Below, in pieces: positions 19,623 through 64,000 of a DNA stretch of 64,000 bases (positions within the stretch are counted from its first letter, which is position 1; each line of letters opens with the position of its first letter). The DNA is taken from IMG/VR virus record IMGVR_UViG_3300046787_000408, positions 62,001 through 126,000 of that record. The stretch is one strand, 5' to 3'. Both the position numbers and the translations under genes were made by a program. Under the pieces are notes generated by a model. The model was not told the DNA's origin. It saw nothing but the letters and a program-made list of their open reading frames with translations, and did no database searches.

Positions 19623-20762
19623 ATGAGTAATTTCTTTTGCGCAGCCCCTTGGCGTGGGCTGCATATCAATCCCCGTGGCGATGTCAAAACCTGCTGTGCC
19701 GGCGACCCCAACATGTTGGGCAACCTCAACAGCAACACCATCACAGAGATACTGGATTCAGATCTCTTAAAACAAATACGCAGCGAAATGTCACAAGGAC
19801 GAGCACACAAATACTGCTCCAACTGTGTACAGGCCGAACGCTTTGGTGCAGATTCAGAACGCAAGTGGCACAACGACACCAATCCCAATTTTGACTATGC
19901 CACAGCTGGAGAGCAGTATCACTATCCTGTGATTGTGGATGTGCGTTGGAACACCACTTGCAACCTCAGTTGTAACTATTGCAGTGAATGGGCCAGCTCC
20001 AAATGGTCAGCACTCAAGGGCATTCCGTTCAAGTCAGGCTCAAGGCCCTACTATGAACAAGTGTGTGACTTTCTTGAACAACACAAATCGCACATTCAAG
20101 ACGTTGCACTTGTGGGCGGAGAGCCTTTGCTGCTACCCGAAAACGAACGACTGTTGGATGTTATCCCAGAAGATTGTGCTGTGACCTTGATCACCAACAT
20201 GAATGTGGATCTTGACAAGAACAAGATCTTTAAGAAACTAGCACAACGCAAACGAGTTGGGTGGAGCATGAGCTTTGACAACATTGGCGACAGATTTGAA
20301 TATGTGCGTTATGGCGGCAAGTGGAGCATGCTAACAGAGAACTTGGTCAAAGTCAAAGACTTGTTCAAACAAGGCCAGTGGGGTGGTATTCATGCAGTGT
20401 ACAACATCTACAATGCCACACGTATTGTGGAGTTTCGTGAATGGGCTGCTGAACAAGGTGTGTCAGTGTTGTGGCAGAATCTGTTTCAACCCGATTATCT
20501 GGATCCGTTCTTGCACGGACCAGAAGTTGCTGCCGCTGCCGCAGCTGAAATTGAAAGATTCTATGCTACAGGCCTAGCAACACCAGCAGAGCGTCAATTC
20601 TTTGACAATGCTTTGACCACATACCGTGCAGTTACACAAGAACGATCAGGTATCACCAGCAAGTTTCGAGAACATATTGCCGAGATTGAAACTCAATACC
20701 ACAAAGACCAAGCTGGAAAGTTTGCGCAGTTGTGGCCTGAATTATCACATCTAGTACTATGA
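19623..20762 (+). CDS. Radical SAM protein with N-terminal SPASM/twitch-like domain
   Basis: FCAAPW..L.I.P.G....CC and C..C, then CNLSCNYC and GGEP. Confidence 0.88.
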   Translation: MSNFFCAAPWRGLHINPRGDVKTCCAGDPNMLGNLNSNTITEILDSDLLKQIRSEMSQGRAHKYCSNCVQAERFGADSERKWHNDTNPNFDYATAGEQYHYPVIVDVRWNTTCNLSCNYCSEWASSKWSALKGIPFKSGSRPYYEQVCDFLEQHKSHIQDVALVGGEPLLLPENERLLDVIPEDCAVTLITNMNVDLDKNKIFKKLAQRKRVGWSMSFDNIGDRFEYVRYGGKWSMLTENLVKVKDLFKQGQWGGIHAVYNIYNATRIVEFREWAAEQGVSVLWQNLFQPDYLDPFLHGPEVAAAAAAEIERFYATGLATPAERQFFDNALTTYRAVTQERSGITSKFREHIAEIETQYHKDQAGKFAQLWPELSHLVL

Positions 20763-21496
20763 AACCATTACACGCTTGGAGTAGCTATGCAGGACAAACG
20801 ATTGATTGGATCAGCCCTGACAGCAAAGAAAACTACCAACAGCACATGAATGATCCTGACAAACGCAAACTGTTGCAATTGTTTGGGTGGGAACACCAAC
20901 AGATCAAGTATACATTCAACAGTGACGGTTTTCGTACAAATGAGTTTGGTGGCGGCCCCAACTTTGTAACTATTGGATGCAGTTTCACTCAAGGTGTTGG
21001 AGTGCATCGTGAAGACACTTGGGCACAATTGGTTAGTGATCAACTGGGATTGCCTGTGTACAATCTTGGAATATCTGGAGCTAGCTCAGACACTTGCTAC
21101 AGAATCATCAAACATTATGCACCAATACTCAAGCCACAGTTTGTGGTATTGCTGGAGCCTAGAATCAATAGAACTGAGCTACATCACAACGCAGGCCAAC
21201 CGCCACATGTGATCAACTGGGCATATGACGCTGCTTCCTGGGGCAACAGTGCCTATACAAAAACTTGGTTAAGCAATGATACCAACTTGCAGCTACACGC
21301 AGAAAAGAATCAAGCAGCAATTGCGCATGTGTGTGCTCAACTTGGTATTCCTGTAGTAATGTATGCACCCGACGACTACCTAGATCTTGTGGTAGACAAA
21401 ACACAACTGGACTTGGGTCGCGACTTGTTGCATCCTGGACGCTTAAATAATCGTGCATTTGCGCAAGTGGTATATGACCACGTGAAAGACTTATGA
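20759..21496 (+). CDS. SGNH/GDSL-like hypothetical protein
   Basis: TIGCSFTQG, NLGISGAS, and D..HPG near the C-terminus. Confidence 0.55.
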   Translation: MKPLHAWSSYAGQTIDWISPDSKENYQQHMNDPDKRKLLQLFGWEHQQIKYTFNSDGFRTNEFGGGPNFVTIGCSFTQGVGVHREDTWAQLVSDQLGLPVYNLGISGASSDTCYRIIKHYAPILKPQFVVLLEPRINRTELHHNAGQPPHVINWAYDAASWGNSAYTKTWLSNDTNLQLHAEKNQAAIAHVCAQLGIPVVMYAPDDYLDLVVDKTQLDLGRDLLHPGRLNNRAFAQVVYDHVKDL

Positions 21497-23079
21497 GTAT
21501 CAAACCCACATTAGACACAGTGCTGGTAAAATCCCCGCACCGTAAAGAAACATACACACAAGACCAGCTAACTGAGTTTGCTCGTTGTGCTGACCCTGTA
21601 ACTGGTCCCATGTATTTCATGGATAACTTTTTCTATATTCAGCATCCCACACGAGGCAAGATGTTGTATCAGCCATTTGAATATCAAAAGCGACTGATTG
21701 AAAATTATCACAACAGCAGATTCTCAATTTCCTTGATGCCTCGACAAACTGGTAAGTCAACATCAGCAGCAGGTTATTTGCTATGGTATGCTATGTTTGT
21801 TCCTGACGCTACTATTCTAGTGGCTGCACACAAGTATCTAGGCGCACAAGAGATTATGCAACGTATAAGATATGCTTATGAGTTGTGCCCCAATCACATT
21901 AGAGCAGGTGCTACCAGCTACAACAAAGGCTCGCTAGAGTTTGACAACGGATCACGTATTGTATCGCAAACCACTACAGAAAACACTGGTCGTGGTATGT
22001 CTATCACGCTGCTGTATCTGGACGAATTTGCGTTTGTGCGACCCACAATTGCCAAAGAGTTCTGGACTTCTATTACGCCTACACTGAGTACTGGTGGTAA
22101 AGCTATTATTACAAGTACTCCAAACTCCGACGAAGATCAGTTTGCGCTGATTTGGAAAGGTGCCAACAAAGTCGAAGACGAGTACGGAAACCCTAGACCC
22201 AATGGCTTGGGTATCAATGGATTCCGAGCGTTTCGTGCGTTCTGGCGTGAACATCCTGATCGTGATGATTCATGGGCTGACGAACAACGAGCACAGTTGG
22301 GAGAAGAACGATTCCGTCGAGAAATGGACTGCGAATTCGTTATCAACGACGAGACCTTGATTAGTCCACTAAAATTGTTGGATCTCGAAGGTGTAGAGCC
22401 CTCCAGCAAGACTGGACAAGTGCGTTGGTACAGACCTATACAAGCAGACAAGATCTATATTGTGGCCCTGGATCCTAGTCTAGGCACCGGGGGTGACCCT
22501 GCTGCTATACAAGTATTTGAAGCAGACACCACAGAGCAAGTAGCTGAATGGCGACACAACAAAACAGACGTGCCCACACAAATCAAGATCATGGTAGATA
22601 TCATAAAAGAACTACATGCTGTGGTCAAAGACGAAAAAAAGATCTACTACTCTGTAGAAAACAACACTCTAGGCGAAGCAGCACTAATTTCTATCAACGA
22701 ATACGGTGAAGAAAACATCCCGGGTTATTTTCTCAGTGACAATTCAGTACAAGGACAAAACGGGCGCAGAATTCGCAAGGGATTTACCACCACAAACAAA
22801 AGCAAGATTGTGGCCTGTAACAAGTTCAAGATTCTAGTGGAATCGGGGCGTATGAAACTGTACAGTAAACCCTTGATTAGTGAACTCAAAAACTTTGTTG
22901 CACTGGGCAGTAGCTATGCAGCCAAGCCTGGCGAAACAGACGACCTAGTAATGAGTACTTTGCTAGCTACCCGCATGCTGATGTTGTTGCAAACTTATCA
23001 CCAAGAACTAGATTCGCACCTTAAAGATCATGGGGACAACATCATTGAACCTATGCCTTTCATTTCTATGATGCGCTAA
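21493..23079 (+). CDS. gp17: Terminase large subunit
   Basis: PRQTGKST Walker A, LLYLDEFAF Walker B, ITSTPN, ALDPSLGTGGD and DDLVMS nuclease motifs. Confidence 0.95.
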   Translation: MSIKPTLDTVLVKSPHRKETYTQDQLTEFARCADPVTGPMYFMDNFFYIQHPTRGKMLYQPFEYQKRLIENYHNSRFSISLMPRQTGKSTSAAGYLLWYAMFVPDATILVAAHKYLGAQEIMQRIRYAYELCPNHIRAGATSYNKGSLEFDNGSRIVSQTTTENTGRGMSITLLYLDEFAFVRPTIAKEFWTSITPTLSTGGKAIITSTPNSDEDQFALIWKGANKVEDEYGNPRPNGLGINGFRAFRAFWREHPDRDDSWADEQRAQLGEERFRREMDCEFVINDETLISPLKLLDLEGVEPSSKTGQVRWYRPIQADKIYIVALDPSLGTGGDPAAIQVFEADTTEQVAEWRHNKTDVPTQIKIMVDIIKELHAVVKDEKKIYYSVENNTLGEAALISINEYGEENIPGYFLSDNSVQGQNGRRIRKGFTTTNKSKIVACNKFKILVESGRMKLYSKPLISELKNFVALGSSYAAKPGETDDLVMSTLLATRMLMLLQTYHQELDSHLKDHGDNIIEPMPFISMMR

Positions 23080-23089
23080 ATATACTACT

Positions 23090-29598: not shown

Positions 29599-29599
29599 T

Positions 29600-31395: not shown

Positions 31396-32154
31396 ATGAA
31401 AATTGTTATTGTTACAGGTGGTTTTGACCCCATACATTCTGGTCATCTTGCTTACTTTAAAGCAGCCCGAACACTCGGAGATATGCTAGTTGTAGGTCTC
31501 AATTCAGATGCATGGCTTGCTCGAAAAAAGGGCAGGCCATTCATGCCCATGAATGAAAGATATGCACTGGTTAGTGCGCTGTCTATGGTAGATGAAGTTG
31601 TGATCTACAACGACAACGACAACAGTAGTTGTGATGCTATTCGCAAAGTCAAAGAATCCTACCCTGGCCACGAAATTATTTTTGCCAACGGTGGCGACCG
31701 CACTCGAGACAATATCCCTGAAATGATATTTGATGATGTGGAGTTTGTGTTTGGTGTAGGCGGTGAGGACAAGAAAAACAGCTCAAGCTGGATTCTTGAA
31801 GATTGGAAAAAGCCCAAAACAGATCGTACCTGGGGCTATTATCGTGTGCTACACGAAGTGGGCAATCACGTCAAACTCAAAGAGCTTACTGTAAACCCCA
31901 AAACATGCTTGAGCATGCAACGGCATGAAAATCGTGCGGAGTTTTGGTTTGTGGCTGAAGGTGAAGCTACTGTGTACACTGTGGACCCGCATAGTACAGA
32001 ATATGACTTGCTGTCCAGTCCTGCTCGTCACCAACACACTTGGATTCAGCTCAACCAGTGGCATCAGCTGTGCAACGAAACAGATCAACCACTACGGTTG
32101 ATTGAAATTCAATACGGTGAACAATGTGTTGAGGAAGACATTGAACGCAAATGA
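31396..32154 (+). CDS. Cytidylyl/adenylyltransferase (TagD/RfaE-like) fused to cupin (mannose-6-P isomerase type II C-terminal-like)
   Basis: GGFDPIHSGH, GLNSD.WL..KKG and ANGGDR, then R.WG.Y.V...LS.Q.H..R.E.W...IEIQ.G...EEDI.R. Confidence 0.88.
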   Translation: MKIVIVTGGFDPIHSGHLAYFKAARTLGDMLVVGLNSDAWLARKKGRPFMPMNERYALVSALSMVDEVVIYNDNDNSSCDAIRKVKESYPGHEIIFANGGDRTRDNIPEMIFDDVEFVFGVGGEDKKNSSSWILEDWKKPKTDRTWGYYRVLHEVGNHVKLKELTVNPKTCLSMQRHENRAEFWFVAEGEATVYTVDPHSTEYDLLSSPARHQHTWIQLNQWHQLCNETDQPLRLIEIQYGEQCVEEDIERK

Positions 32155-32828
32155 AGCCAATTCCTGTGTTTGTGGGCTACGACCCTCGTGAAGCTATTGC
32201 TTACCATACCTGCGTTAACAGTATTATTCGTAACAGCTCTCAACCTGTGGCTATTGTGCCAGTTGCACTGAACTTGTTTCGAGACTATTCTGAAACCCAT
32301 ACTGATGGATCTAACCACTTTATCTACACACGCTTCTTGGTTCCTTATCTTTGTGATTTCTCTGGTCATGCTATCTTCATTGATGGCGATATGATTGTAC
32401 GCGGTGACATTGCTGAACTATGGAACATGCGTGATTCAGTCTGTGATGTGCAAGTGGTCAAACATGATTATAAAACTCGCATGCCTGTAAAATACCTAGG
32501 AGCAAAGAATGAAGATTACCCAAGAAAAAATTGGAGTAGTGTTATTTTGTGGAATTGTAATAGTTTCCCTAATAGGAAGCTTACTCCTGATTTCATCCAG
32601 CGATCTACCGGTGCTGAGCTTCACCGTTTTACCTGGCTAGATGACAGACGAATTGGCGAACTCCCTCCTGAATGGAACTGGTTGCCCGATGAATACGGGC
32701 CAAATGCCGACGCCAAGTTACTGCACTACACACTTGGCACGCCATGCTTTCAAGAGTTTGCTGATACGCCGCAAGGCAACGAATGGCACAGAGAACGTAT
32801 TCTAACTGAATACTGTCAACAACGTTAA
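32151..32828 (+). CDS. Glycosyltransferase, GT-A fold (GT8-like)
   Basis: VFVGYDPRE, F...RFL.P, IFIDGD, RKNWSS, WNWL, HYT.G.P. Confidence 0.85.
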   Translation: MKPIPVFVGYDPREAIAYHTCVNSIIRNSSQPVAIVPVALNLFRDYSETHTDGSNHFIYTRFLVPYLCDFSGHAIFIDGDMIVRGDIAELWNMRDSVCDVQVVKHDYKTRMPVKYLGAKNEDYPRKNWSSVILWNCNSFPNRKLTPDFIQRSTGAELHRFTWLDDRRIGELPPEWNWLPDEYGPNADAKLLHYTLGTPCFQEFADTPQGNEWHRERILTEYCQQR

Positions 32829-33466
32829 CGCCAGTGTGCCTTGACCAGTGCATGATCCATCATGGTGCTGGGTTTTTGACTTGTTTTTCTAAACATCAAT
32901 AGCTTGACTTGGTCAAGAGTGTAATTCATATCTCTGCGTGATGCTATGTGAAACCATTCGGTTGGGCAGTGATCAGTTAGCAACGTGTGGGCAGTGTGCT
33001 CACTCACAATAGCTTGGTCTCCGTACAACGGTGGTACACTATACAGTTTTTCCCAGTGCGCAAGTGAACGACTATTGTACAGATCCCACAAGTGACTGTA
33101 ATCATCATTCCAATACATCAAGGCACTTGAGTGTATGTTCTTGTCGGCTTCAACCCACATCACAAACTTTTGGTGTTGTATGCGACTGATCATTTCGTCC
33201 AAGTTGCCACAAATCACAGTGTCAAGATCCAGGAACAGGGTTGGGCCCGATAACACTCCAGGGCGAAACAACTGCATCTTGCTCCAGAAACCATGATCAC
33301 CGGGCAACAACTCAATCCGCTTGCATGGTACATCACAGTCACTAAAGCATATGAATTCGTGAGGTAGTGTTAGATTGCGTTGAACTCCGCGTTGAAGCTT
33401 TTCAACCCAGGAGGCATCATACCCAACTTTGCCGCCTTGGCGCAGCAAACAAACTACGTTAATCAT
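32825..33466 (-). CDS. Glycosyltransferase, GT-A fold
   Basis: WSKMQLF, LFLDLDTVI, SSALM.W, YGDQ. Confidence 0.8.
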   Translation of the reverse strand: MINVVCLLRQGGKVGYDASWVEKLQRGVQRNLTLPHEFICFSDCDVPCKRIELLPGDHGFWSKMQLFRPGVLSGPTLFLDLDTVICGNLDEMISRIQHQKFVMWVEADKNIHSSALMYWNDDYSHLWDLYNSRSLAHWEKLYSVPPLYGDQAIVSEHTAHTLLTDHCPTEWFHIASRRDMNYTLDQVKLLMFRKTSQKPSTMMDHALVKAHWR

Positions 33467-34001
33467 TGTAGCGTTCTAATACCAGTAGTCCAGATGATTT
33501 GTTGCAGTGTTCAACAATGTGCCAATCTCTGTTGTAGTGCAAATACTCTATCACAGCTTCAAACACACCTGGCCAATCACTGGGGTCGTGTAGCACAACA
33601 TATCTCTTGGCCAGGCCAGCATGTTTGTTTAGCTCGGCAATACAATGATCTCGTGTATGCACAGTATCAATAAACAACAAGTCACATTCTTCAGCTTCAA
33701 CTTTTAGGCTGTCACCCACAGTAAACTCAAAGTCAGTTCCGTTTTGATCAGCATTGTGTTTTAATTCGTCAAGCACAGTTAGATACTTGTCAGTGATATC
33801 ATAACTTCGCAAGCGTTTGGGTTGACCAGACAGCCATGCGCAAGTGCTTAGACCGGTGTACACTCCAAACTCTATGATACTATCAACCCTGCTGGCGTAT
33901 TGCTTGTAGGTATCAAACCTTGTGGGACTATCGCCTAACCAGTTGGTTGGGACAATCTTTAAATCAATGTAATCAGCTTTTAGCTCTTGCAGTGTTCTCA
34001 T
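33459..34001 (-). CDS. Class I SAM methyltransferase (Methyltransf_24-like)
   Basis: IIEFGVYTGLST, DLLFIDTVH, VVLHD. Start re-picked at the ATGA overlap. Confidence 0.8.
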   Translation of the reverse strand: MRTLQELKADYIDLKIVPTNWLGDSPTRFDTYKQYASRVDSIIEFGVYTGLSTCAWLSGQPKRLRSYDITDKYLTVLDELKHNADQNGTDFEFTVGDSLKVEAEECDLLFIDTVHTRDHCIAELNKHAGLAKRYVVLHDPSDWPGVFEAVIEYLHYNRDWHIVEHCNKSSGLLVLERYND

Positions 34002-34540
34002 CTTGACATCCAATACACGCCCAGTTTGCTTTTTTGGCTTTTGCGATACGAGTCCTTGATGTAGTGTCCCCAGGTGGCTACAACTTCGTCATGACTCCAG
34101 TCATCCTTGATGTGTGCTTCGTGCGGGTTAGGATACGCATGTTCGTCCTGTGGCATGTGCCTGATAGGGATACTAACAATCAGCATGTCTGCCACTTGCA
34201 AAATACGATCCACAAGAGCAACGGCGTCCTCTTTGGTCATGTGTTCTAGTACATCGCCGGCTATGACCACGTTGGGATTGAACGCTGCCCAGTCCACAGT
34301 GCGAACGTCTTGATTTAGTATCTGATTGTATCTGCGTTCTAATTCAAATTCTTCAATATAAGGTTTCCAAATTTCAACACCAATCCAGTTAGCGTCTACA
34401 CAACATTTGGCATCTTCTCTTATGAGCTTGACATACGTTCCTGATCCTGGACCGATATCTACTACAGTTTTGATAGTTTCTTGATTGGATTGGAACCAAG
34501 CCAGTGTTTCGGCTTTTCCTGATTTTAGACTATACGACAT
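33998..34540 (-). CDS. Class I SAM methyltransferase
   Basis: VVDIGPGSG, GVEIW, GDVLEHM, SIP. Confidence 0.85.
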   Translation of the reverse strand: MSYSLKSGKAETLAWFQSNQETIKTVVDIGPGSGTYVKLIREDAKCCVDANWIGVEIWKPYIEEFELERRYNQILNQDVRTVDWAAFNPNVVIAGDVLEHMTKEDAVALVDRILQVADMLIVSIPIRHMPQDEHAYPNPHEAHIKDDWSHDEVVATWGHYIKDSYRKSQKSKLGVYWMSR

Positions 34541-34566
34541 TGTTTTCCTTGTAAGTTTTGCGCCAC

Positions 34567-34576
34567 TAAATATTTA
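34567..34576. promoter_or_regulatory. Palindromic bidirectional late-type promoter TAAATATTTA
   Basis: TAAATA on both strands, overlapping, between the divergent genes at 34540(-) and 34593(+). Confidence 0.6.
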
Positions 34577-34592
34577 TATACACACATAATAC

Positions 34593-35348
34593 ATGAAAGC
34601 ATTTGTAATTTACCTACCTGAACGCCCGCACAGTGTGGCATCTTCTCGCGACATGATAAAAAGTCTCAAGAGTTACAACATTGATGCTGAACTGTTTGAA
34701 GGCACACCTGGAGATCAAGCAGTGGCCATGGCCAACAAGGCACAAAAAACCTTGTACCCTTACAGCATCAAGAATCGACTGCTGGATGATCATGATATTG
34801 AGCAACTGATACGTCCAGAGCTGTACGAGGAATTCAAAAAGAAACATCGTTACGAAATAATTGAACGTCAGCTTATAGGTGAAAAAGATAAAGGCAAACT
34901 GAGTCGTCCAGGAGTAATTGGTTGTTTTTACAGTCATTACAACTTGTGGAAAAAGTGTATAGACCTTGGCGAGCCTATCATGATTTTTGAAGACGATGTC
35001 AAGTTCTATAGAGGTTACACTCCTGTGGCATTTGACGGTGTACTGATTCTAAGCCTTGGCAAGAGTTCGTTCATGAGTGATCCCCAAAAGACCTACTTGG
35101 AAAACCCCTCAGGTCCTGCTCAAGCTCGCAAGTGGCAGAATTTTAGCATGCCCGGAGCCAGCGGTTATGCTATTACTCCAGATGCTGCTTTGGCTTTGAC
35201 CAAGTTTTATCGTCCCTATTGGTATCCCGCAGACAATGCTATCAATCAGTTTGTGGTGCCTTTGCAGATCAGCACATACTTGATGGGGCGCAACACTTTG
35301 CCAGAAGAAGGCAATATATCAATGACCAAAGCCAAGGATTGGGTATGA
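34593..35348 (+). CDS. Glycosyltransferase family 25
   Basis: AFVIYL...R, G.IGC..SH..LW, IFEDD, G..GYAIT..AA..L, P.D. Confidence 0.88.
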   Translation: MKAFVIYLPERPHSVASSRDMIKSLKSYNIDAELFEGTPGDQAVAMANKAQKTLYPYSIKNRLLDDHDIEQLIRPELYEEFKKKHRYEIIERQLIGEKDKGKLSRPGVIGCFYSHYNLWKKCIDLGEPIMIFEDDVKFYRGYTPVAFDGVLILSLGKSSFMSDPQKTYLENPSGPAQARKWQNFSMPGASGYAITPDAALALTKFYRPYWYPADNAINQFVVPLQISTYLMGRNTLPEEGNISMTKAKDWV

Positions 35349-52159: not shown

Positions 52160-53113
52160 ATGATTACTTGCGTAGATGCGTTTAAAAATCTAAACGTTGT
52201 TATACAGCAAGGTGGTACTAGAATATCGCCTTGTTGTATATCGCCTACTGTGCCGGTACAGCAGTTGGATTTTAACCACAGCTACCTAACTTCTATTAGA
52301 GAAAGTTTTTCTCAAGGAACATGGCCTTCTAGCTGTGTTAATTGCAAAACTAACGAGCAAGCAGGATATACTAGTAGACGGATAGGCAGTAACCAATGGT
52401 ATACTGATCATCAAATAAACAACCACTCAGTTGAATTAACTAGGATAGACTATTGGACTGGTGACACCTGCAACCTTGCTTGTGTAATATGTGGTCCTGA
52501 AAACAGCAGTATGTGGCAACAGGAATTGGGGATTCAAAAATCATCAGTTGCCAACACACTATGGAAGCAACTGAATCTAACAGCATTAAAATCTGTACAC
52601 TTCAACGGAGGAGAACCGTTGTTGAGTAAAGAGCATGTGCGATTTTTACATGCAATTCCAAATAAATCACAAGTATATTTAAATTACAATACCAACGGAA
52701 CTATTTTACCTAATCAAGAGCTACAACAATTGTGGGCTGAATTCAAGTTAGTACAATTGGATTTTAGTATTGATGATGTAGGCAAAAGATTTGAATACCA
52801 GCGATATCCTGCCCAATGGGATACAATTGAAAACAATTTACAATGGTACATTGAATCTGCTCCGCACAATTGTATGTTCGCAGTCAACACCACAGTGGGG
52901 ATATTGAATCAAAATAACTTAGCTACTCTTGATCAGTGGTTGTTGGAGCATTTTACCCAATCAAGATTTGGTGATCCAATTGAGCATCGTCGACAGAATG
53001 CATTGGGTAAATTTTCAATAACATCTGATATTATACAGGTACGACTGCACCTTGACACACTAGATCAAAGACGCAAAACCAATTGGCGTCTTGTGTTCCC
53101 AGAGTTAGCGTGA
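52160..53113 (+). CDS. Radical SAM protein with N-terminal twitch/SPASM-like domain
   Basis: ISPCC, C..C, CNLACVIC, NGGEP, YNTNG. Confidence 0.85.
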   Translation: MITCVDAFKNLNVVIQQGGTRISPCCISPTVPVQQLDFNHSYLTSIRESFSQGTWPSSCVNCKTNEQAGYTSRRIGSNQWYTDHQINNHSVELTRIDYWTGDTCNLACVICGPENSSMWQQELGIQKSSVANTLWKQLNLTALKSVHFNGGEPLLSKEHVRFLHAIPNKSQVYLNYNTNGTILPNQELQQLWAEFKLVQLDFSIDDVGKRFEYQRYPAQWDTIENNLQWYIESAPHNCMFAVNTTVGILNQNNLATLDQWLLEHFTQSRFGDPIEHRRQNALGKFSITSDIIQVRLHLDTLDQRRKTNWRLVFPELA

Positions 53114-53785: not shown

Positions 53786-54982
53786 ATGGAAAAAGGTAAA
53801 AATTTGTATTGTGCCTGGGCTGACACAGGCCTAGCACTGCATAATTCAGGACGATGCTTGCTGTGTTGTCATAGCCAAACTTATTTGCAGGACACAAATG
53901 GCCAGGAAATATACCTGGACACAGGCTCTATTGAACAGGCCTGGAACAGTCCCACTAGAAAACAAATTCAAGCAGATCTTGAAGCTGGTATTCAGCATCC
54001 CAATTGCAGCGCATGTTGGAACGAAGAAAGTGCAGGGCGTGCAAGTCGCCGCACAGAAGCCAATCGACAGTTTGCTGATATCACTGTCAACCCTGACCGT
54101 CCGCAACTGGTAGACCTTAAACCTGGCAATACCTGCAACTTGGCATGCAGAACCTGTTGGCCTGAAGTCAGCAGCAAATGGTATCGAGACTATTGGGAAG
54201 TTGAAGCTCAGAAATGGGAACCAGACTACCGCAAGTATCTTGATGGGTGGAAACGTATCCGCACCAGTTATGACCGCGATAACGTAAAGCTGTGGTCTGA
54301 CCTAGAATCGTGGTTTACAGACGTAGAGTACTATGACATCTACGGGGCAGAGCCAATGCTGTTGGACAATGTGTTTGTGATCTTACAACAAAGTGTGGCA
54401 TCAGGTAGAGCAGCACATCAAGGCATACACATCAACACCAACTGTACTATATGGAATCAAAGCTACATTGATATTCTTGCACAATTCAAGAACGTGGTTA
54501 TTGACGTTAGCATTGATGGGATTGGCGCACAATATGACTATATTCGTTATGGCGAAACTTGGAGCACTGTGGAACTGAATCTTGCTAGGTATCAGAATCT
54601 AGTTCGTAACCACAGCAACATTCGCATGCATGTTTGTGTCACTGTGTGTATTCTAAATGTATTGCAAGTGATGAACCTGCAGGAATATTTTTGTGCCCGT
54701 GGTGTTCCTGTATTTTTTAACATGGTACATCATCCACAACACTTGAATGTGAGATCCTTGCCTGACACTATCAAACAACAGGTACGAGCCAAGTTTGCAC
54801 CTGCTGAACCCAATTGGCAAATAACCAGTATACTGGATTTCATGGACATGCCCCTGGACAATCAACCTCAACTGTGGCTCAAGTTCTTGGAGTCAACAAA
54901 AAAGCTAGACCTGTTACGAGAACAAGATCTAGCTGAAACGTTTCCTGAATTGGCAGAATTGATTAGCCGGCTACAGCCTTGA
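53786..54982 (+). CDS. Radical SAM protein with N-terminal twitch/SPASM-like domain
   Basis: YCAW...G...LCC, C..CW..E, CNLACRTC, GAEP, INTNC, SIDG. Confidence 0.87.
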   Translation: MEKGKNLYCAWADTGLALHNSGRCLLCCHSQTYLQDTNGQEIYLDTGSIEQAWNSPTRKQIQADLEAGIQHPNCSACWNEESAGRASRRTEANRQFADITVNPDRPQLVDLKPGNTCNLACRTCWPEVSSKWYRDYWEVEAQKWEPDYRKYLDGWKRIRTSYDRDNVKLWSDLESWFTDVEYYDIYGAEPMLLDNVFVILQQSVASGRAAHQGIHINTNCTIWNQSYIDILAQFKNVVIDVSIDGIGAQYDYIRYGETWSTVELNLARYQNLVRNHSNIRMHVCVTVCILNVLQVMNLQEYFCARGVPVFFNMVHHPQHLNVRSLPDTIKQQVRAKFAPAEPNWQITSILDFMDMPLDNQPQLWLKFLESTKKLDLLREQDLAETFPELAELISRLQP

Positions 54983-59272: not shown

Positions 59273-59293
59273 TCAATAACTGATTAACAGAAC

Positions 59294-59324: not shown

Positions 59325-59346
59325 TTGGCCGTTAAATACTGGTAGA

Positions 59347-59781: not shown

Positions 59782-59782
59782 C

Positions 59783-60046
59783 ATGGTCGACACGACTGAC
59801 ATTGAAAAAAAGAGTTTGGAAGCCCACGTTGAATTGTGTGCTGAACGTTACAAGATGCTGGAACTCAAGCTGGAGTCTGTTGACGGCAAAATTGCAGAAG
59901 TGCATGCAGATGTTGCCACTATTGCAAGCACAGTAAACAAAATGGCTGAAAAACGCAACGATCAACTGATTGCTTGGGGCGTTGGTATAATTGGTGCGTT
60001 GACATCCACAGTGGTATGGATGTTGACACAATACGTATTCAAATGA
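59783..60046 (+). CDS. Coiled-coil protein with C-terminal transmembrane helix (holin/XhlA-like topology)
   Basis: H...C.ERY..L..., then a hydrophobic C-terminus. GGAG RBS. Confidence 0.55.
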   Translation: MVDTTDIEKKSLEAHVELCAERYKMLELKLESVDGKIAEVHADVATIASTVNKMAEKRNDQLIAWGVGIIGALTSTVVWMLTQYVFK

Positions 60047-60540
60047 TCAAACACGAGAAACTTGAACGCTTTGCCACTAAAGAAATGCAAAGTCTAGCTA
60101 CCAGGCTTATTGTGCCTGATGGCAAGGACGGCTATCATGCATTTGGCAAGTATCATGTATCTCCCAAAACTGAACATGTTACTGTTGGTATCAAGAATAG
60201 AGATCCACTAACCTTTGGAAGCAAACGCAGCGCTATCAGTTGGTGTGTAGCAGATCACCTAAATCAGCACGCTCTAGCACGTAGCATTCATTTGCTAGAC
60301 AACAAAAAACATAGCCTAGCGGCGGACATACAGTGCCGACGGGCTCTAGCCGAAAGAAGTCGCAGCCAAGACTTCTATGAATCAGTAACAACCAAGATAC
60401 AAAGCAAGGTTGAGTACTATAATGTGTTGACTCAGGAATTAGAGAAATGCATTAATTCGGCTAAATATTGGCAAATAAGAGGATTCTCCCATGAAACTGA
60501 ACGACCTGGCCGCTCCGCGTCCCACAAAACAAATCGCTAA
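60043..60540 (+). CDS. Hypothetical protein
   Basis: ATGA coupling. Start re-picked. Confidence 0.6.
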   Translation: MIKHEKLERFATKEMQSLATRLIVPDGKDGYHAFGKYHVSPKTEHVTVGIKNRDPLTFGSKRSAISWCVADHLNQHALARSIHLLDNKKHSLAADIQCRRALAERSRSQDFYESVTTKIQSKVEYYNVLTQELEKCINSAKYWQIRGFSHETERPGRSASHKTNR

Positions 60541-61435
60541 AGTATTTGAAAGTTACTTTGGTACTGGTATCAAGTTTGAAAGCCTAAGTCGCAATCAGAC
60601 TCGAAATCTGTTGAGCCGTGTGCAAGGCTTGCTCAAAGAGCACCGTAGCACATCAGCTAGACACACCAGCGAACAAAATCCCAGTTACCTCAAACTGGTT
60701 ATGATGGAACAAGCACTGACTCAGCGAGTTAAAGAAAACATGGTGCCGCCAGTGGGTCAAACTACTCCACCTGGACAACCAGCCAAGCCTGGACAACCAG
60801 CCAAGCCTGGACAACCGGCCCCTGCTGTGGCAGGCGCTGCGGCTAAAGATCCCAAGTTGGCTGCGGCACTGAAGAAAAGCCAAGCAGGCCAAACACTGAA
60901 TCCTGAAGAACAAAAGATGGTAGCTGGTGCTGCCATGATGGCGCAAGAAAGTCGTTTACGCCGTGCCTACAAGATGTTGAAAGAAAGTGAAGTTCAACAA
61001 GCTCAAGTTGTTCTTGCTGCCCAAGACATGGTAGACAAAATGCAAGGTATGTTGGAAGACGTATCTGAACTACAGTTCAAAGAACTGCCAGCCTTGGTTG
61101 ATTCAATCAAGAACCAAGTTGGTATTGACCAAGCCACTCAGTTCAACGGTGATGCTAGTGCTGCACTCAGCGGACTCATGCAAAACCTGCAAGCAGCCAA
61201 GCAACAACTGGACCAAGCCCTGGGCGTGGTAACTGGTACTGCTGCTCCAGCTGCTCCTGACGCTGCGGCAATGGGTGCTCAAGCTGGTGCTGAACTAGGC
61301 GCAGAAGCTGGTGCTGACATGGGTGCTGAACTAGGCGCAGAAGCTGGTGCTGAAGATGACCTAGCTGCTGTTGATGCTGAAGCTGAACTAGGTGCAGAGC
61401 CAGCTGGTGCTGCTCTAGGCCGCGCACGTAGATAA
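60491..61435 (+). CDS. Probable head core/scaffold-like protein with low-complexity repeats
   Basis: Coiled coils, PGQPAK x3, GAELGAEAGA repeats, LKESE site. Confidence 0.6.
   Translation: MKLNDLAAPRPTKQIAKVFESYFGTGIKFESLSRNQTRNLLSRVQGLLKEHRSTSARHTSEQNPSYLKLVMMEQALTQRVKENMVPPVGQTTPPGQPAKPGQPAKPGQPAPAVAGAAAKDPKLAAALKKSQAGQTLNPEEQKMVAGAAMMAQESRLRRAYKMLKESEVQQAQVVLAAQDMVDKMQGMLEDVSELQFKELPALVDSIKNQVGIDQATQFNGDASAALSGLMQNLQAAKQQLDQALGVVTGTAAPAAPDAAAMGAQAGAELGAEAGADMGAELGAEAGAEDDLAAVDAEAELGAEPAGAALGRARR
60770..60820 (+). repeat. 18-bp coding tandem repeat (about 2.8 copies)
   Basis: CCTGGACAACCAGCCAAG unit encoding PGQPAK. Confidence 0.9.
61286..61353 (+). repeat. 32-bp direct repeat, 36-bp period, coding
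   Basis: GGTGCTGAACTAGGCGCAGAAGCTGGTGCTGA twice, encoding GAELGAEAGA. Confidence 0.85.
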
Positions 61436-61785
61436 TGAAAATATTTGAAGTAGCCGGAGACTCATCTACACCCAGTCCTGACCAATTGTTGGGACTGGTG
61501 CAGTTTCTTGCAGGCCGCGCTGACGATACTAGCGCTCCAAAACAGATCAGTGTAGATGCGTTTGTGAACTTGGCGCAGAGCCTAGACATCAACGTAAACC
61601 GAAACAACGTTGAAGAAATTGTAGGACAACCACCACTCAGTAGTGTGTTGGAACCATTTGAACCTGACACAAACCAAATTGTGTTCAAAGGTGCCGAACA
61701 GTCTGGTCCTACCCAAATGCCCGTAAACAAAGCACAAGACATTGTGGCCGCAGCAGCCAAATCGGCGATGAAACGTAAACGATAA
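61435..61785 (+). CDS. Small hypothetical protein (MKIFEV...)
   Basis: Coupled ORF. Confidence 0.65.
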   Translation: MKIFEVAGDSSTPSPDQLLGLVQFLAGRADDTSAPKQISVDAFVNLAQSLDINVNRNNVEEIVGQPPLSSVLEPFEPDTNQIVFKGAEQSGPTQMPVNKAQDIVAAAAKSAMKRKR

Positions 61786-61789
61786 CCGG

Positions 61790-61818
61790 TTGACCTTGAC
61801 CGGCAAATAGTGTATAAT
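61790..61818 (+). promoter_or_regulatory. Sigma70-type promoter
   Basis: TTGACC-17-TATAAT ahead of the 61838-iscU-GNAT-radical SAM unit. Confidence 0.8.
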
Positions 61819-61837
61819 GCACTAAGGAGTTTTACAA

Positions 61838-62131
61838 ATGATCAAAATTATCACAGCAGTAGCACTTTTGTTTGCAACCAATGCACATGCCTGGGGCGAT
61901 CGTGAGCAAGGCGCTTTGGCAGGTATTGTGGGCACATTGATTTGGCAAAAGCTAGAACATCAAAATCACCCACCAAGGCCTCAAGTGATTCATCAGCCGG
62001 TGTATACACAGCCCACAGTGATTTATCAGTATCCACAGCCCATGCCCGAGCGTCAGTGCTATGTGGTACGTGAAACTCGCAACTACAACGGTTCCTACAC
62101 CAGAGAGATTCACTGTCATGGCCTACAGTGA
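61838..62131 (+). CDS. Small exported protein (signal peptide, glycine-zipper-like, Pro/Gln-rich)
   Basis: MIKIITAVALLFATNAHA signal, GALAGIVG segment, two Cys. AAGGAG RBS. Confidence 0.65.
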   Translation: MIKIITAVALLFATNAHAWGDREQGALAGIVGTLIWQKLEHQNHPPRPQVIHQPVYTQPTVIYQYPQPMPERQCYVVRETRNYNGSYTREIHCHGLQ

Positions 62132-62513
62132 CAAAGTAGTAGATCACTACGAAAACCCCCGCAACGTTGGTTCGTTTGACAAAAACGACTTGGACGTGGG
62201 CACTGGCATGGTAGGTGCACCTGCATGCGGTGATGTAATGAAACTGCAAATTCGAGTTCAAGATGGAATTATTACAGATGCAAGATTCAAAACCTATGGT
62301 TGCGGTAGTGCAATCGCAAGTTCCTCTCTTGTTACCGAGTGGGTTAAAGGCAAGACGTTGGACCAGGCCGCAGCTCTTAAAAATTCAGAGATTGCTGAAG
62401 AACTTGCACTGCCCCCAGTCAAAATCCATTGTAGCATCCTTGCTGAAGACGCCATCAAAGCCGCAGTAGACGACTATCGTAAACGTCATGAAAATACAAC
62501 ACAGTCACAGTGA
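62118..62513 (+). CDS. iscU: Fe-S cluster scaffold protein IscU/NifU-N
   Basis: MAYSDKVVDHYENPRNVG, GAPACGDVM, FKTYGCGSAIASSS, LPPVKIHCS.LAEDAI. All three Cys present. Confidence 0.95.
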   Translation: MAYSDKVVDHYENPRNVGSFDKNDLDVGTGMVGAPACGDVMKLQIRVQDGIITDARFKTYGCGSAIASSSLVTEWVKGKTLDQAAALKNSEIAEELALPPVKIHCSILAEDAIKAAVDDYRKRHENTTQSQ

Positions 62514-63060
62514 ACATCTAGCAGAATACGCAACTCATCTAAAGAATCTTACCGAGCAAGATAGATATACACGGTTTGGTTATGCCGCATCACCGGCTGC
62601 CATTGACTCCATGATCTTGAACATGCTGTATAATCAGAGTCAACATCATTTGTTTACGTATCGCATTGACAATCGTGTTGTGGGCTTTGGGCATTTGGCA
62701 CGTGAAGGAGCCGACTGGGAACTGGCAGTTAGTATAGATCATGAGTACCAAGGACGAGGTATTGCCAACGAACTAATGTCACACATGATTGCTTGGGGCA
62801 AGGTACACGGAGTTCATTCAGTGTTCATGCATTGTATTACAGACAATCAAAAAATACAACATCTGGCTCGCAAGCATGGATTAAAAACCATGAGTCGTGC
62901 CGGGCATGAAATAACTGCACAAGTAGAACTGCCAGATCCCACTGTGCTAGATTATACCGCAAACTTTGTAGCTGAACAACAAGAGCTAGCCCAGGGAATT
63001 GCAAAGCTACAACGCACCTGGCTCAGGAATTGGTTGAAGCCTAGTAATCATGCAGTATGA
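62488..63060 (+). CDS. GNAT acetyltransferase
   Basis: ELAVSIDHEYQGRGIA..L (motif A) and N.....L..K.G. Confidence 0.85.
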   Translation: MKIQHSHSEHLAEYATHLKNLTEQDRYTRFGYAASPAAIDSMILNMLYNQSQHHLFTYRIDNRVVGFGHLAREGADWELAVSIDHEYQGRGIANELMSHMIAWGKVHGVHSVFMHCITDNQKIQHLARKHGLKTMSRAGHEITAQVELPDPTVLDYTANFVAEQQELAQGIAKLQRTWLRNWLKPSNHAV

Positions 63061-64000
63061 AATCAATCATCTGCATCTTGAACTAAGCTCACTATGCAAT
63101 GCACGATGTCCTTTTTGTCCCAGGACTGTGCAGGGATACCCTGTAAACCAGGGATTCGTTGAGACCAATCTAAGTCTTGCTGACTTTAAAAAAACATTTG
63201 TACCTCCTCGCCTTGGACGAGTGCATCAAACCGTGATCAACGGCAACTTTGGGGACTTTGTAATGAATCCCGAAAGTATAGATATTATCAAGTATCTACG
63301 CCGCAGCCGACACAACATGGATATTCGTATTCATACCAACGGCAGTGCAAGGGATCGTGAATTCTGGCACACTCTAGGTAACATTGGAGTCACAGTACTG
63401 TTTGGTATTGACGGTCTAGAGGACACACATGCCTTGTATCGTCAAGATACCAACTTTGATAATATCATACGAAATGCTGAAACTTTTATAAGTGCAGGCG
63501 GCAATGCTATTTGGAGTATCAATCAGTTTGATCACAACCAAGCACAACTTCCTGAAATTCATGCCCTGGCTGAAAAAATAGGATTCTCAGAAGTGCAGGT
63601 TCGCCCCACTGCACGTGACAACGGACCAGTGTACAATCGTCGTGGACAAAAAGTTGCTGGTATCAAGACTGATTGGAACTGGCCTGATCAGCTGGATAAA
63701 TCTTTTATTGAAATAAAAGTTGCTCAACAAGTTGCTGCACACAAAAAAACAGTCAATATTGCATGCTGGGCAATTCAAGAACGCAGTGTGTACATGGCTG
63801 CTGACGGGCATGTGTATCCTTGTTGTTGGACTGGCCACAATCCTGCTGAGTACAGATCTCCCAACACAGTTTCTGTCTGGAACAACGAGTTGGTTAAATA
63901 TGTTAGACATAACCATGCGCCCACAGTTGGTATAGAAGCAGCATTAGATTGGTTTGACGATCTGGCTGCATCGTGGAATACGCATGACCAACCAAGAGTA
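63050..64000 (+). CDS. Radical SAM protein with C-terminal SPASM-like motif, runs off the right edge
   Basis: Hand translation MQYEINHLHLELSSLCNARCPFCPR...NGNFGD...HTNG...FGIDG...YMAADGHVYPCCW. I found no in-frame stop, and it is absent from the ORF track. Confidence 0.85.
   Translation, partial: MQYEINHLHLELSSLCNARCPFCPRTVQGYPVNQGFVETNLSLADFKKTFVPPRLGRVHQTVINGNFGDFVMNPESIDIIKYLRRSRHNMDIRIHTNGSARDREFWHTLGNIGVTVLFGIDGLEDTHALYRQDTNFDNIIRNAETFISAGGNAIWSINQFDHNQAQLPEIHALAEKIGFSEVQVRPTARDNGPVYNRRGQKVAGIKTDWNWPDQLDKSFIEIKVAQQVAAHKKTVNIACWAIQERSVYMAADGHVYPCCWTGHNPAEYRSPNTVSVWNNELVKYVRHNHAPTVGIEAALDWFDDLAASWNTHDQPRV

What the first reader, a model, noticed from the sequence alone, without database searches (positions are those of the whole stretch)
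19623..64000. Four radical SAM/SPASM-type enzymes plus a phage-encoded IscU
Seen: CxxxCxxC enzymes at 19623, 52160, 53786 (N-terminal twitch-like CC/CxxC) and 63050 (C-terminal YPCC), dispersed among core genes. An intact iscU is in the same apparent operon as the fourth. Established: each such enzyme needs at least one [4Fe-4S] cluster, IscU is the scaffold, and SPASM/twitch enzymes often modify peptides/proteins or sugars (for example BtrN and anSME). Inference: the phage supplies its own Fe-S assembly capacity for a paralogous modification pathway whose substrates may be the glycan island products or virion proteins.
Basis: partly seen in the sequence, partly recalled or inferred. Interest (0 to 1): 0.62.

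Follow-up and report, generated by a model that had tools for sequence, protein, structure and literature searches.

The report
Jumbo phage radical-SAM arsenal with Fe-S kit
A giant freshwater phage carries at least twelve iron-sulfur "radical SAM" enzymes, four of them in this window. It also carries host-derived parts of the iron-sulfur cluster assembly line (IscU, IscA, ErpA), most likely to load those enzymes; a similar pairing has been reported once in marine phages, and what the enzymes modify is still unknown.

Summary
All four ORFs are radical SAM (rSAM) enzymes, and IscU is intact.

- **The four enzymes.** Three belong to the uncharacterised N-terminal-twitch family NF033640. The fourth has a C-terminal twitch domain and runs 51 nt past the window end.
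- **The IscU operon.** The real gene order is IscU, GNAT, rSAM4, IscA, N-twitch rSAM.
- **The whole contig.** It is 300 kb, about 81% complete, from a freshwater jumbo phage. It holds 12 rSAM genes (7 N-twitch, 2 C-twitch, 3 class-B-like), IscU, IscA, and ErpA next to a superoxide dismutase (SOD). It has no IscS, ferredoxin or flavodoxin.
- **Relatives.** Near-complete relatives have 12-19 rSAM hits, one IscU and two A-type carriers each. Seven isolated outgroup jumbo phages have 0-6 rSAMs and no scaffold.
- **Origin of IscU.** Phage IscUs form one clade nested in Comamonadaceae, which indicates a single capture. Two unrelated rSAM types occupy the IscU-IscA slot in different sublineages.
- **Limits on the coupling.** Phage CP220 has no scaffold or carrier gene although its paper reports 11 rSAMs. 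Phage C48C1 has IscU and only one rSAM.
- **Turnover.** Only rSAM1 is a core ortholog across the clade.
- **Substrates.** They remain unknown. Sugar-tailoring neighbours occur only outside the window.

Nishimura et al. 2017 (marine viral genomes) is the precedent, so this is a new member of a known kind.

The parts
18899..19156 (+). 85-aa protein with 8 Cys (CxxCxxCC, YkgJ-like). It is a possible extra metal or Fe-S protein, two genes upstream of rSAM1.
   Evidence: PF03692 scores 26.5 bits against a cut-off of 23. No function was tested.
19623..20762 (+). rSAM1, an N-terminal-twitch radical SAM enzyme (379 aa). It is the only rSAM conserved as a core ortholog across the clade. It lies between an SNase-like ORF and a GDSL-like ORF followed by the large terminase.
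   Evidence: NF033640 226 bits (cut-off 170), Pfam SPASM over residues 6-68 (43 bits) and Radical_SAM 33 bits. Reciprocal best hits are 81% identical in G001 and 72% in G003, in both cases next to the large terminase.
52160..53113 (+). rSAM2, an N-terminal-twitch radical SAM enzyme (317 aa). Its start lies 2 nt after the stop of the DnaB-like helicase gene.
   Evidence: NF033640 193 bits. The closest counterparts in G001 and G003 are only 31-33% identical. In G001 this slot holds no rSAM.
53786..54982 (+). rSAM3, an N-terminal-twitch radical SAM enzyme (398 aa), flanked by two minus-strand ORFs of unknown function.
   Evidence: NF033640 292 bits. There are 232 homologues at E no higher than 1e-5, and the 120 listed range from 43 to 89% identity, all from metagenomes. 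The nearest ESM Atlas clusters are 88-100% viral. The AF2 model has pLDDT 94. Its PDB matches cover only the generic rSAM core.
62118..62513 (+). IscU, the Fe-S cluster assembly scaffold (131 aa). It derives from a Comamonadaceae-type host isc operon.
   Evidence: TIGR01999 220.5 bits (cut-off 192.4). The three Cys, Asp, His and LPPVK are present by inspection. It is 86-90% identical to Limnohabitans, Rhodoferax and Hydrogenophaga IscU. Nine phage IscUs are monophyletic (support 96/84) and nested in Comamonadaceae.
62488..63060 (+). GNAT-family acetyltransferase (190 aa) inserted between IscU and rSAM4. It is absent from this position in G001.
   Evidence: PF00583 51 bits and PF13302 44 bits.
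63050..64000 (+). rSAM4, a C-terminal-twitch radical SAM enzyme. The window holds 317 of its 333 aa; the last two cluster Cys (C318, C322) lie just beyond the window. IscA (window-equivalent 63984-64340) and another N-twitch rSAM (64337-65710) follow.
   Evidence: PF04055 39.9 bits. The AF2 model has pLDDT 90.9, and its best PDB match is BlsE at E = 1.4e-11. IscA scores 152.6 bits against TIGR02011 (cut-off 150.6).

Best explanation
**What the window is.** It is part of a roughly 350-kb freshwater jumbo myophage. Its large terminase is T4-type, and the nearest isolates are PA5oct-like phages at 54% identity. The likely host is a Comamonadaceae-type betaproteobacterium.

**The enzymes.** The phage encodes a large, fast-turning-over set of radical SAM enzymes. 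Most of them probably bind two [4Fe-4S] clusters: the SAM cluster plus one auxiliary 'twitch' cluster.

**The Fe-S kit.** To mature this heavy Fe-S load during infection, the lineage captured the iscU-iscA pair of a host isc operon once. It also carries ErpA next to a superoxide dismutase.

**Proposed mechanism (inferred).**
1. The phage supplies the scaffold (IscU) and the [4Fe-4S] carriers (IscA, ErpA).
2. It still relies on host IscS for sulfur, host HscBA (the LPPVK motif is retained), and host ferredoxin or flavodoxin for electrons.
3. rSAM genes have repeatedly inserted beside or inside the iscU-iscA pair, so that client and scaffold are co-expressed.

**Chemistry.** It is not established. 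The most likely single class is tailoring of sugars, nucleotide-sugars or small molecules. This reading comes from paralogs outside the window, not from the four window genes.

**Shown here:** family memberships, gene order, clade-wide conservation, single host-derived origin, gene turnover.
**Inferred:** cluster delivery to the rSAMs, dependence on host IscS, and the substrates.
For: **Family and cluster sites.** Both AF2 models are confident and have an rSAM core.

**Gene counts.** The genome has 12 rSAM genes, IscA and ErpA and SOD.

**Clade pattern.** G001, G002, G003 and G014 (91-100% complete) have 17, 14, 19 and 12 Radical_SAM hits, with one IscU and two A-type carriers each. IscU is present in 10 of 13 long relatives, and the three without it are 25-33% fragments.

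**Outgroups.** Seven isolated jumbo phages have no IscU, no A-type carrier and 0-6 rSAMs.

**Origin.**
- Phage IscU is 86-90% identical, and phage IscA 67% identical, to adjacent Comamonadaceae genes.
- 79 of 80 bacterial loci have IscA within the 3-kb flank of IscU.
- Phage IscUs are monophyletic with support 96/84.

**Linkage.**
- IscU and IscA are adjacent in G002-G006.
- An rSAM sits between them in G000, G001, G007 and G008.
- The G000 and G001 occupants are unrelated by BLAST.
- G003 has rSAMs on both flanks.

**Sugar context, outside the window.**
- A C-twitch paralog lies in the operon GT-like, rSAM, NAD epimerase/dehydratase (184 bits), DegT.
- A conserved island in G001 and G003 joins a carbamoyltransferase with 5-6 tandem N-twitch rSAMs. 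In a 208-kb relative the same island also lies near DegT.
- The best Foldseek match for both models is the nucleoside-sugar decarboxylase BlsE.

**Precedent.** PMC5332604.
Against: **No direct evidence.** Nothing here shows expression or cluster transfer. No RNA run holds the stretch.

**The association is essentially one evolutionary event in this clade.** Elsewhere it breaks both ways:
- No IscU or A-type carrier was found in the CP220 genome, although the published description reports 11 rSAM genes.
- Vibrio phage K566 has 6 rSAM hits and no scaffold.
- T4-like phage C48C1 has IscU and only one rSAM.

**The sugar reading is weak for the window genes.**
- The four window rSAMs sit beside terminase, helicase and unknown ORFs, not beside sugar genes.
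- All NCBIfam equivalog scores are far below cut-off.
Confidence: 0.6

Rival explanations
1. IscU, IscA, ErpA and SOD are general auxiliary metabolic genes. They keep the host's own Fe-S proteins (respiration, central metabolism, DNA enzymes) working after host transcription is shut off. The rSAM genes are unrelated cargo that merely share a large genome.
For: Phage C48C1 has IscU and only one rSAM. The CP220 genome has no IscU or A-type carrier although its paper reports 11 rSAM genes, and K566 has 6 rSAM hits and no scaffold. Fe-S assembly genes are described as photic-zone viral auxiliary metabolic genes independent of rSAMs (PMC5332604). SOD and ClpP also fit general host maintenance.
Against: rSAM genes of two unrelated types sit between or beside IscU and IscA in different sublineages. 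Every near-complete clade member combines the kit with 12-19 rSAMs, whereas outgroup jumbo phages of the same size have neither. At two clusters each for most enzymes, the rSAMs are by far the largest predicted Fe-S demand in the genome.
Confidence: 0.22
2. The twitch rSAMs are protein or peptide maturases. They would install thioether or C-C crosslinks, epimerise residues, or form formylglycine-like groups on virion proteins or on small phage peptides, as sactisynthases, anSME, EpeE and SuiB do.
For: Most characterised SPASM/twitch enzymes act on peptides. Profile and fold matches include anSME, SkfB, CteB, SuiB, ChlB and EpeE. rSAM1 is a core gene inside the packaging and structural module, next to the terminase. 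Aeromonas phage 332-Vera has eight rSAM genes inside its structural cluster (PMC12390700).
Against: Pfam found no RRE/PqqD-like recognition domain in the four proteins. No precursor-like peptide was identified, and the search for one was not exhaustive. All RiPP-maturase equivalog models score far below cut-off. The fold matches are no better than those to the sugar or nucleotide enzymes.
Confidence: 0.2
3. The rSAMs act on nucleotides or DNA. They would take part in base hypermodification or in viperin-like nucleotide chemistry used for anti-restriction, anti-defence or exclusion of competing phages. That role would explain the rapid turnover and their position among replication genes.
For: Several rSAMs sit between or next to primase, DnaB helicase, UvsW, DNA polymerase B and ligase. 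The repertoire turns over quickly while the core genome stays colinear. GTP cyclohydrolase I and a PTPS/QueD-like gene lie near one paralog. Viperin and QueE are among the tied structural matches.
Against: The 300 kb holds no TGT/DpdA and no QueC above cut-off. QueE and viperin models score 17-34 bits against cut-offs of 180-260. No hydroxymethylase or DNA glycosyltransferase was looked for or found.
Confidence: 0.13

Closest known systems
Marine environmental viral genomes with Fe-S assembly genes plus many radical SAM genes (Nishimura et al. 2017, mSphere, PMC5332604). [quoted passage not shown]
   Same: A tailed phage encodes an Fe-S scaffold or carrier of proteobacterial origin together with a dozen rSAM enzymes. 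The authors also proposed that the viral assembly proteins serve viral Fe-S proteins.
   Different: - Habitat and lineage differ: freshwater, a jumbo phage of about 350 kb, related to PA5oct rather than a 183-kb T4-like genome.
- The capture was independent, from Comamonadaceae.
- One genome carries IscU, IscA and ErpA (next to a SOD gene) together.
- Counts reach 19 Radical_SAM hits, of which up to 16 belong to NF033640.
- rSAM genes are intercalated in the iscU-iscA pair.
Campylobacter phages CP220 and CPt10 (Firehammervirus), with 11-12 radical SAM genes (Timms et al. 2010, PMC2853527).
   Same: The number of rSAM genes in a T4-type phage is unusually high. Some sit in an exchangeable multi-gene module together with a small-molecule tailoring enzyme.
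   Different: CP220 has no IscU and no A-type carrier. None of its rSAMs reaches the NF033640 cut-off. Its host is microaerophilic and lives in the gut.
NCBIfam NF033640 (N_Twi_rSAM), twitch domain-containing radical SAM proteins. The family has no characterised member.
   Same: Three window proteins and four more in the genome pass the curated cut-off over their full length. They have the N-terminal Cys set as well as CxxxCxxC.
   Different: Nothing is known of the family's chemistry. Here it occurs as 7-16 deeply diverged paralogs per phage genome. The nearest Atlas clusters are almost all viral.
Characterised twitch rSAM enzymes that act on sugars or nucleosides: BtrN, BlsE, SpeY and DesII.
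   Same: The architecture has two clusters, with a four-Cys auxiliary site. The spacing C-x17/18-C ... CxxC resembles that of BtrN (recalled from the literature, not tested here). BlsE is the top Foldseek match for both models, and BtrN and SpeY appear for the C-twitch model. Some paralogs lie in sugar-tailoring operons.
   Different: Identity is only 12-19%, and TM-scores are 0.4-0.58. In the N-twitch family the domain is at the opposite end of the chain. Equivalog models are not met (BlsE TIGR04466 scores 27 bits against a cut-off of 400). No substrate is known.
Bacterial ISC system (iscRSUA-hscBA-fdx).
   Same: Phage IscU, IscA and ErpA pass the equivalog cut-offs. In several clade members they keep the host iscU-iscA order.
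   Different: Only the scaffold and carriers are kept. IscS, ferredoxin and flavodoxin are absent. IscR, HscB and HscA were not searched for. In some lineages phage genes interrupt the pair.

Membership tests
Radical SAM superfamily (PF04055) | CxxxCxxC cluster motif near the start of the core, plus a match to the superfamily profile | tested here: met
   The motif is present in all four. PF04055 scores are 33.0, 29.5, 25.5 and 39.9 bits against a cut-off of 29.5. P0003 is below the Pfam cut-off but scores 292 bits on NF033640.
Radical SAM superfamily (PF04055) | Partial TIM-barrel rSAM core fold | tested here: met
Radical SAM superfamily (PF04055) | Reductive cleavage of SAM by a bound [4Fe-4S] cluster | not testable with these tools
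   This needs reconstitution, EPR and a 5'-deoxyadenosine assay.
NF033640 N_Twi_rSAM | Full-length score above the curated cut-off of 170 bits | tested here: met
   P0001 scores 226.1, P0002 193.0 and P0003 291.6. P0004 scores 45 bits, so it is not a member.
NF033640 N_Twi_rSAM | N-terminal twitch/SPASM-like Cys set ahead of the rSAM core | tested here: met
   C9, C27, C74 and C77 are invariant in the 7 paralogs and in 38 homologues. Pfam SPASM matches residues 6-68 of P0001 at 43 bits.
SPASM (two auxiliary clusters, 7-Cys motif) | Seven conserved C-terminal Cys that bind two auxiliary clusters | tested here: not met
   Only 4-5 invariant auxiliary Cys are found in either type. This fits a single-cluster twitch domain, not a full SPASM domain.
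IscU scaffold (TIGR01999) | Equivalog score above 192.4 bits, plus the three cluster Cys, Asp39, His105 and the LPPVK chaperone motif | tested here: met
   The score is 220.5 bits. The residues were read directly from the translation: APACGD, YGCGS, LPPVKIHC.
IscU scaffold (TIGR01999) | Assembles clusters with IscS and hands them to clients | not testable with these tools
   No IscS is present in the phage contig, so host IscS would be required.
A-type carriers IscA (TIGR02011) and ErpA (NF010147) | Scores above the curated cut-offs, plus the C...CGC motif | tested here: met
   IscA scores 152.6 against a cut-off of 150.6, which is marginal. ErpA scores 146.1 against 117. The Cys motifs are visible. 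Both genes lie outside the window.
Class B (cobalamin-dependent) radical SAM: three genes outside the window | N-terminal B12-binding domain | tested here: inconclusive
   PF02310 scores 19.6 bits, 31.2 bits and no hit, against a cut-off of 32.1. The best NCBIfam hits are C- or P-methyltransferase models far below cut-off.
RiPP maturases of the rSAM-SPASM type | RRE/PqqD-like leader-recognition domain, or a neighbouring precursor peptide | tested here: not met
   Pfam reported no RRE/PqqD family for P0001-P0004 at E no higher than 0.01. All maturase equivalogs are far below cut-off. Precursor peptides were not searched for systematically.
Named single-function rSAM equivalogs (anSME, MoaA, QueE, viperin, BlsE, NirJ) | Score above each model's curated cut-off | tested here: not met
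   The best scores are 17-48 bits against cut-offs of 180-650.

The most novel reading that the evidence does not exclude
The N-terminal-twitch rSAM family is a largely phage-borne, rapidly diversifying enzyme set with 7-16 paralogs per genome, among the largest rSAM complements reported for a virus. It would build or vary a hypermodified glycan, nucleotide or other molecule in an arms race with the host. The captured iscU-iscA locus would serve as a recurrent integration and co-expression site for new rSAM cassettes. Together these would form a self-provisioning viral Fe-S enzyme factory with chemistry not yet seen in any characterised rSAM.
Probability: 0.3. Interest if true: 0.75.

Novelty: new member of a known kind. 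Interest (0 to 1): 0.5.

Why it matters
Radical SAM enzymes are costly and oxygen-sensitive. A phage of oxic lake water that carries 12-19 of them, plus its own scaffold, carriers and a superoxide dismutase, must gain something substantial from their chemistry. Nobody knows what any phage rSAM expansion does.

This clade is a tractable system for that question:
- It is abundant: more than 590 related contigs each were found for the terminase and for IscU in IMG/VR.
- It has a predicted cultivable host group (Limnohabitans, Rhodoferax).
- It has one conserved core rSAM next to the terminase.
- It has a conserved island joining a carbamoyltransferase with tandem rSAMs.
- Its natural co-expression partners (IscU, IscA, ErpA) could help to reconstitute the uncharacterised NF033640 family in vitro.

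The clade is also a second, independent case of a phage capturing host ISC genes alongside an rSAM expansion. That strengthens the idea that viral Fe-S assembly genes serve viral clients.

Tried and rejected
**Searches that found nothing useful.**
- Megablast of 12 kb of the window against isolated phages: no match.
- Single-sequence searches of P0001, P0003 and rSAM4 against PDB sequences: no hits. The profile search found only generic rSAM cores.
The bacterial gene contexts of NF033640 were therefore not examined.
- Literature searches for 'NF033640' and for 'iron-sulfur cluster assembly' with 'jumbo phage': no papers.
- Sequencing-run search: only freshwater DNA metagenomes hold the stretch and no RNA run does.

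**Hypotheses not supported.**
- A 7-deazaguanine DNA-modification pathway, suggested by FolE plus a PTPS/QueD-like gene. The 300 kb has no TGT/DpdA and no QueC above cut-off, and no rSAM reaches QueE.
- Phage-encoded electron donors or a desulfurase. Fer2, flavodoxin and IscS are absent. The single glutaredoxin is a CPYC dithiol type, probably serving ribonucleotide reductase.

**Misleading records.** The IscU hits labelled 'Acinetobacter phage MD-2021a' are bacterial chromosome carrying a full isc operon, and were discarded.

**Not run.**
- The large representative protein search: the family scans had already placed the proteins.
- The IscA tree: it did not finish within the time limit.

Full report
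**1. What the window is**

The window is bases 62001-126000 of a 299,983-bp linear IMG/VR virus record that CheckV estimates to be 81% complete. It came from a freshwater metagenome.

It is a tailed phage. It encodes a T4-type large terminase (window 21493-23079), a tail sheath, virion proteins, a primase, a DnaB-like helicase, UvsW- and RecA-like proteins, and a family-B DNA polymerase.

The terminase has more than 590 relatives in IMG/VR, and the 80 best are 71-99% identical. These include near-complete genomes of 316-374 kb, one of them with terminal repeats. The nearest isolates are the PA5oct-like Pseudomonas jumbo phages at 54% identity. Next come Atu_ph07 and Phosso, then the Rak2/GAP32-like phages.

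**2.

The first three pass the curated cut-off of NCBIfam NF033640, 'twitch domain-containing radical SAM protein'. They score 226, 193 and 292 bits against a cut-off of 170. In an alignment of the genome's seven members, C9, C27, C74 and C77 are invariant, as are C117, C121 and C124. The same holds over 38 homologues. That amounts to one auxiliary four-Cys site plus the SAM cluster.

The fourth is a different type. Its rSAM motif is at residues 16-23. The window cuts off its last 16 residues, including C318 and C322. The metagenome's own gene call starts 26 codons too late and loses the CxxxCxxC motif. Homologues of 333 aa support the ATG at 63050.

IscU (62118-62513) passes TIGR01999 at 220.5 bits against a cut-off of 192.4. 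It keeps all catalytic and chaperone-binding residues. A GNAT acetyltransferase lies between IscU and rSAM4, and the three genes overlap each other.

**3. The picture is larger than the window**

Immediately after rSAM4 come IscA (TIGR02011, 152.6 bits against 150.6) and a 457-aa N-twitch rSAM.

The 300-kb contig holds 12 rSAM genes:

| Type | Number | Notes |
|---|---|---|
| N-twitch (NF033640) | 7 | 21-35% identical to each other |
| C-twitch | 2 | 34% identical to each other |
| Long class-B-like | 3 | B12-binding domain matches are weak or absent |

It also has a second A-type carrier that passes the ErpA model (146 bits against 117). That gene sits next to an Fe/Mn superoxide dismutase.

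There is no IscS, Fer2 ferredoxin or flavodoxin. The only glutaredoxin is a CPYC dithiol type. The phage therefore brings the scaffold and the carriers, but not the sulfur donor or the electron donors.

**4. Clade-wide pattern**

| Group | Radical_SAM hits | IscU | A-type carriers |
|---|---|---|---|
| Four relatives, 91-100% complete | 17, 14, 19, 12 | 1 each | 2 each |
| Seven isolated outgroup jumbo phages, 255-490 kb | 0, 4, 4, 1, 0, 6, 1 | none | none |

IscU is present in 10 of the 13 longest relatives. The three without it are 25-33% fragments.

The NF033640 family is expanded specifically in this clade, with 13, 12 and 16 members over the cut-off in three near-complete genomes. RsoM2USA and Vibrio phage K566 have 2 each, and the other outgroups and Campylobacter phage CP220 have none. 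The nearest ESM Atlas clusters to rSAM3 are 88-100% viral.

**5. Origin of the Fe-S genes**

The closest bacterial IscUs, at 86-90% identity, are from freshwater Comamonadaceae: Limnohabitans, Rhodoferax, Hydrogenophaga and Malikia.

In 79 of 80 such loci, IscA lies within the 3-kb flank of IscU, and it is 67% identical to the phage IscA. No other phage protein matches those loci, so they are genuine bacterial isc operons.

In a maximum-likelihood tree the nine phage IscUs form one clade (ultrafast bootstrap 96, SH-aLRT 84) nested among Comamonadaceae. This fits a single capture of iscU-iscA from a host of that family, and it suggests the host range.

**6. Linkage between the kit and the rSAMs**

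- In G002-G006, IscU and IscA are adjacent, as in bacteria.
- In G000 (this genome), G001, G007 and G008, an rSAM lies between them.
- The occupant in G001 is a 315-aa enzyme with a C-x17-C-x53-CxxC C-terminal site. It has no BLAST similarity to this genome's rSAM4. Its 72%-identical ortholog in G003 lies just upstream of IscU, and an N-twitch rSAM lies downstream of IscA.

At least two unrelated rSAM families have therefore settled into or beside the same small locus. This is the strongest evidence here that scaffold and clients are meant to be expressed together.

**7. Turnover**

G000 shares about half its genes with G001 and G003, at median identities of 70% and 60%. The rSAM genes behave differently:

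| rSAM gene | Best counterpart |
|---|---|
| rSAM1 (next to the terminase) | 81% in G001 and 72% in G003: a core ortholog |
| Three others | Moderately conserved, 44-57% |
| The rest | Only 21-40% identical paralogs |

The core genome is colinear, but the rSAM genes occupy different intergenic slots. In G001 nothing follows the DnaB helicase, where this window has rSAM2 and rSAM3. G001 instead has rSAMs ahead of UvsW. More distant members have a C-twitch rSAM after DnaB and another between primase and helicase.

G001 and G003 share a syntenic island of a carbamoyltransferase plus five to six tandem N-twitch rSAMs. That island, and about 50 kb around it, has no counterpart in this contig. It probably lies in the missing 19%, so 12 is a lower bound for this genome.

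**8. What the enzymes do**

This remains open. All named equivalog models are far below cut-off, and no solved structure is close by sequence.

Context gives the only lead.
- One C-twitch paralog (genome 258714) lies in the operon GT-like, rSAM, NAD-dependent epimerase/dehydratase, truncated DegT aminotransferase.
- The rSAM island includes a carbamoyltransferase. In a 208-kb relative the same island also lies near a DegT gene.
- One N-twitch gene lies between weak cytidylyltransferase-like and mannosyltransferase-like ORFs.

These favour tailoring of sugars or small molecules for some members.

The four window genes have no such neighbours. The window's own glycan island (31396-35348: cytidylyltransferase-cupin, GT8, methyltransferase, GT25) is about 10 kb from rSAM1 and about 17 kb from rSAM2. 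Peptide or protein substrates and nucleotide or DNA substrates remain live rivals.

**9. Comparison with what is known**

- Nishimura et al. 2017 (PMC5332604) described marine viral genomes carrying IscU or A-type carriers together with rSAM genes. One T4-like genome had an A-type carrier and 12 rSAMs. They proposed that the viral assembly proteins serve such Fe-S proteins.
- Campylobacter phages CP220 and CPt10 have 11-12 rSAMs (PMC2853527).
- Aeromonas phage 332-Vera has eight rSAMs in its structural cluster (PMC12390700).

The coupling is not universal. No IscU or A-type carrier was found in the CP220 genome. The T4-like phage C48C1 has IscU and a single rSAM.

The finding is therefore a new member of a known kind, and an independent one. 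It comes from a different phage lineage, habitat and donor. It has a fuller kit (IscU, IscA and ErpA, with a SOD gene beside ErpA), larger counts, and the intercalation of rSAM genes into the isc pair, which I did not find described.

**10. Verdict**

- The Fe-S self-provisioning idea is supported by synteny, conservation and origin, but not proven.
- The 'single paralogous pathway' and 'glycan island substrate' parts are not supported as stated.

Noticed in passing
window 18899-19156 (+): An 85-aa protein with 8 Cys of the CxxCxxCC (PF03692, YkgJ-like) family lies two genes upstream of rSAM1, next to an SNase-like ORF. It may be a further metal or Fe-S protein of the phage.
   Followed up: partly
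window 31396-35348: A small glycan island holds a cytidylyltransferase plus mannose-6-P-isomerase/cupin fusion, a GT8, a Methyltransf_24 and a GT25. No rSAM lies inside or next to it.
   Followed up: partly
L015:13941-15042 (genome 193941-195042, outside the window): An IF-1-like ORF, an Fe/Mn superoxide dismutase and ErpA lie in a row. A phage-encoded SOD next to an Fe-S carrier suggests protection of clusters in oxic water.
   Followed up: partly
L018:17500 to L019:5828 (genome 257500-263828): The operon reads GT-like, C-twitch rSAM, NAD epimerase/dehydratase, truncated DegT (195 aa), GTP cyclohydrolase I, HIT, PTPS/QueD-like. No TGT/DpdA and no QueC above cut-off occur in the contig, so a 7-deazaguanine DNA pathway is not supported. 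The product of the FolE/PTPS pair is unexplained.
   Followed up: partly
L014:6935-8825 (genome 166935-168825): A ClpP protease gene (212 bits) lies directly upstream of, and overlaps, an N-twitch rSAM gene. Nishimura et al. list ClpP among Fe-S-related viral genes.
   Followed up: no
G001 255051-268266 and G003 139408-150949 (L230/L231, L206/L207): A syntenic island joins a carbamoyltransferase, five to six tandem N-twitch rSAM genes and unknown ORFs. It lies next to a giant ORF of about 4,850 aa. The 300-kb contig of this window has no counterpart, so the island probably lies in its missing part.
   Followed up: partly
window 63050-63127: The metagenome's own gene call for rSAM4 starts 26 codons downstream and removes the CxxxCxxC motif. 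Automated annotation of this gene family may therefore under-call rSAMs.
   Followed up: yes
phage collection records CAKLQF020000009.1 and CAKLQH020000011.1: The records named 'Acinetobacter phage MD-2021a' carry a complete bacterial iscRSUA-hscBA-fdx operon with chromosomal neighbours. They are bacterial DNA, not phage-encoded IscU.
   Followed up: yes
L017:11624-15814 (genome 231624-235814): A 1396-aa ORF with amidoligase (PF12224) and weak nucleotidyltransferase matches lies two genes downstream of an N-twitch rSAM. Its function is unknown.
   Followed up: no
G003:C1:318146-319294: One N-twitch rSAM match in the complete relative G003 contains an in-frame TAG. It may be a decaying paralog, which would fit the rapid turnover of the family.
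   Followed up: no
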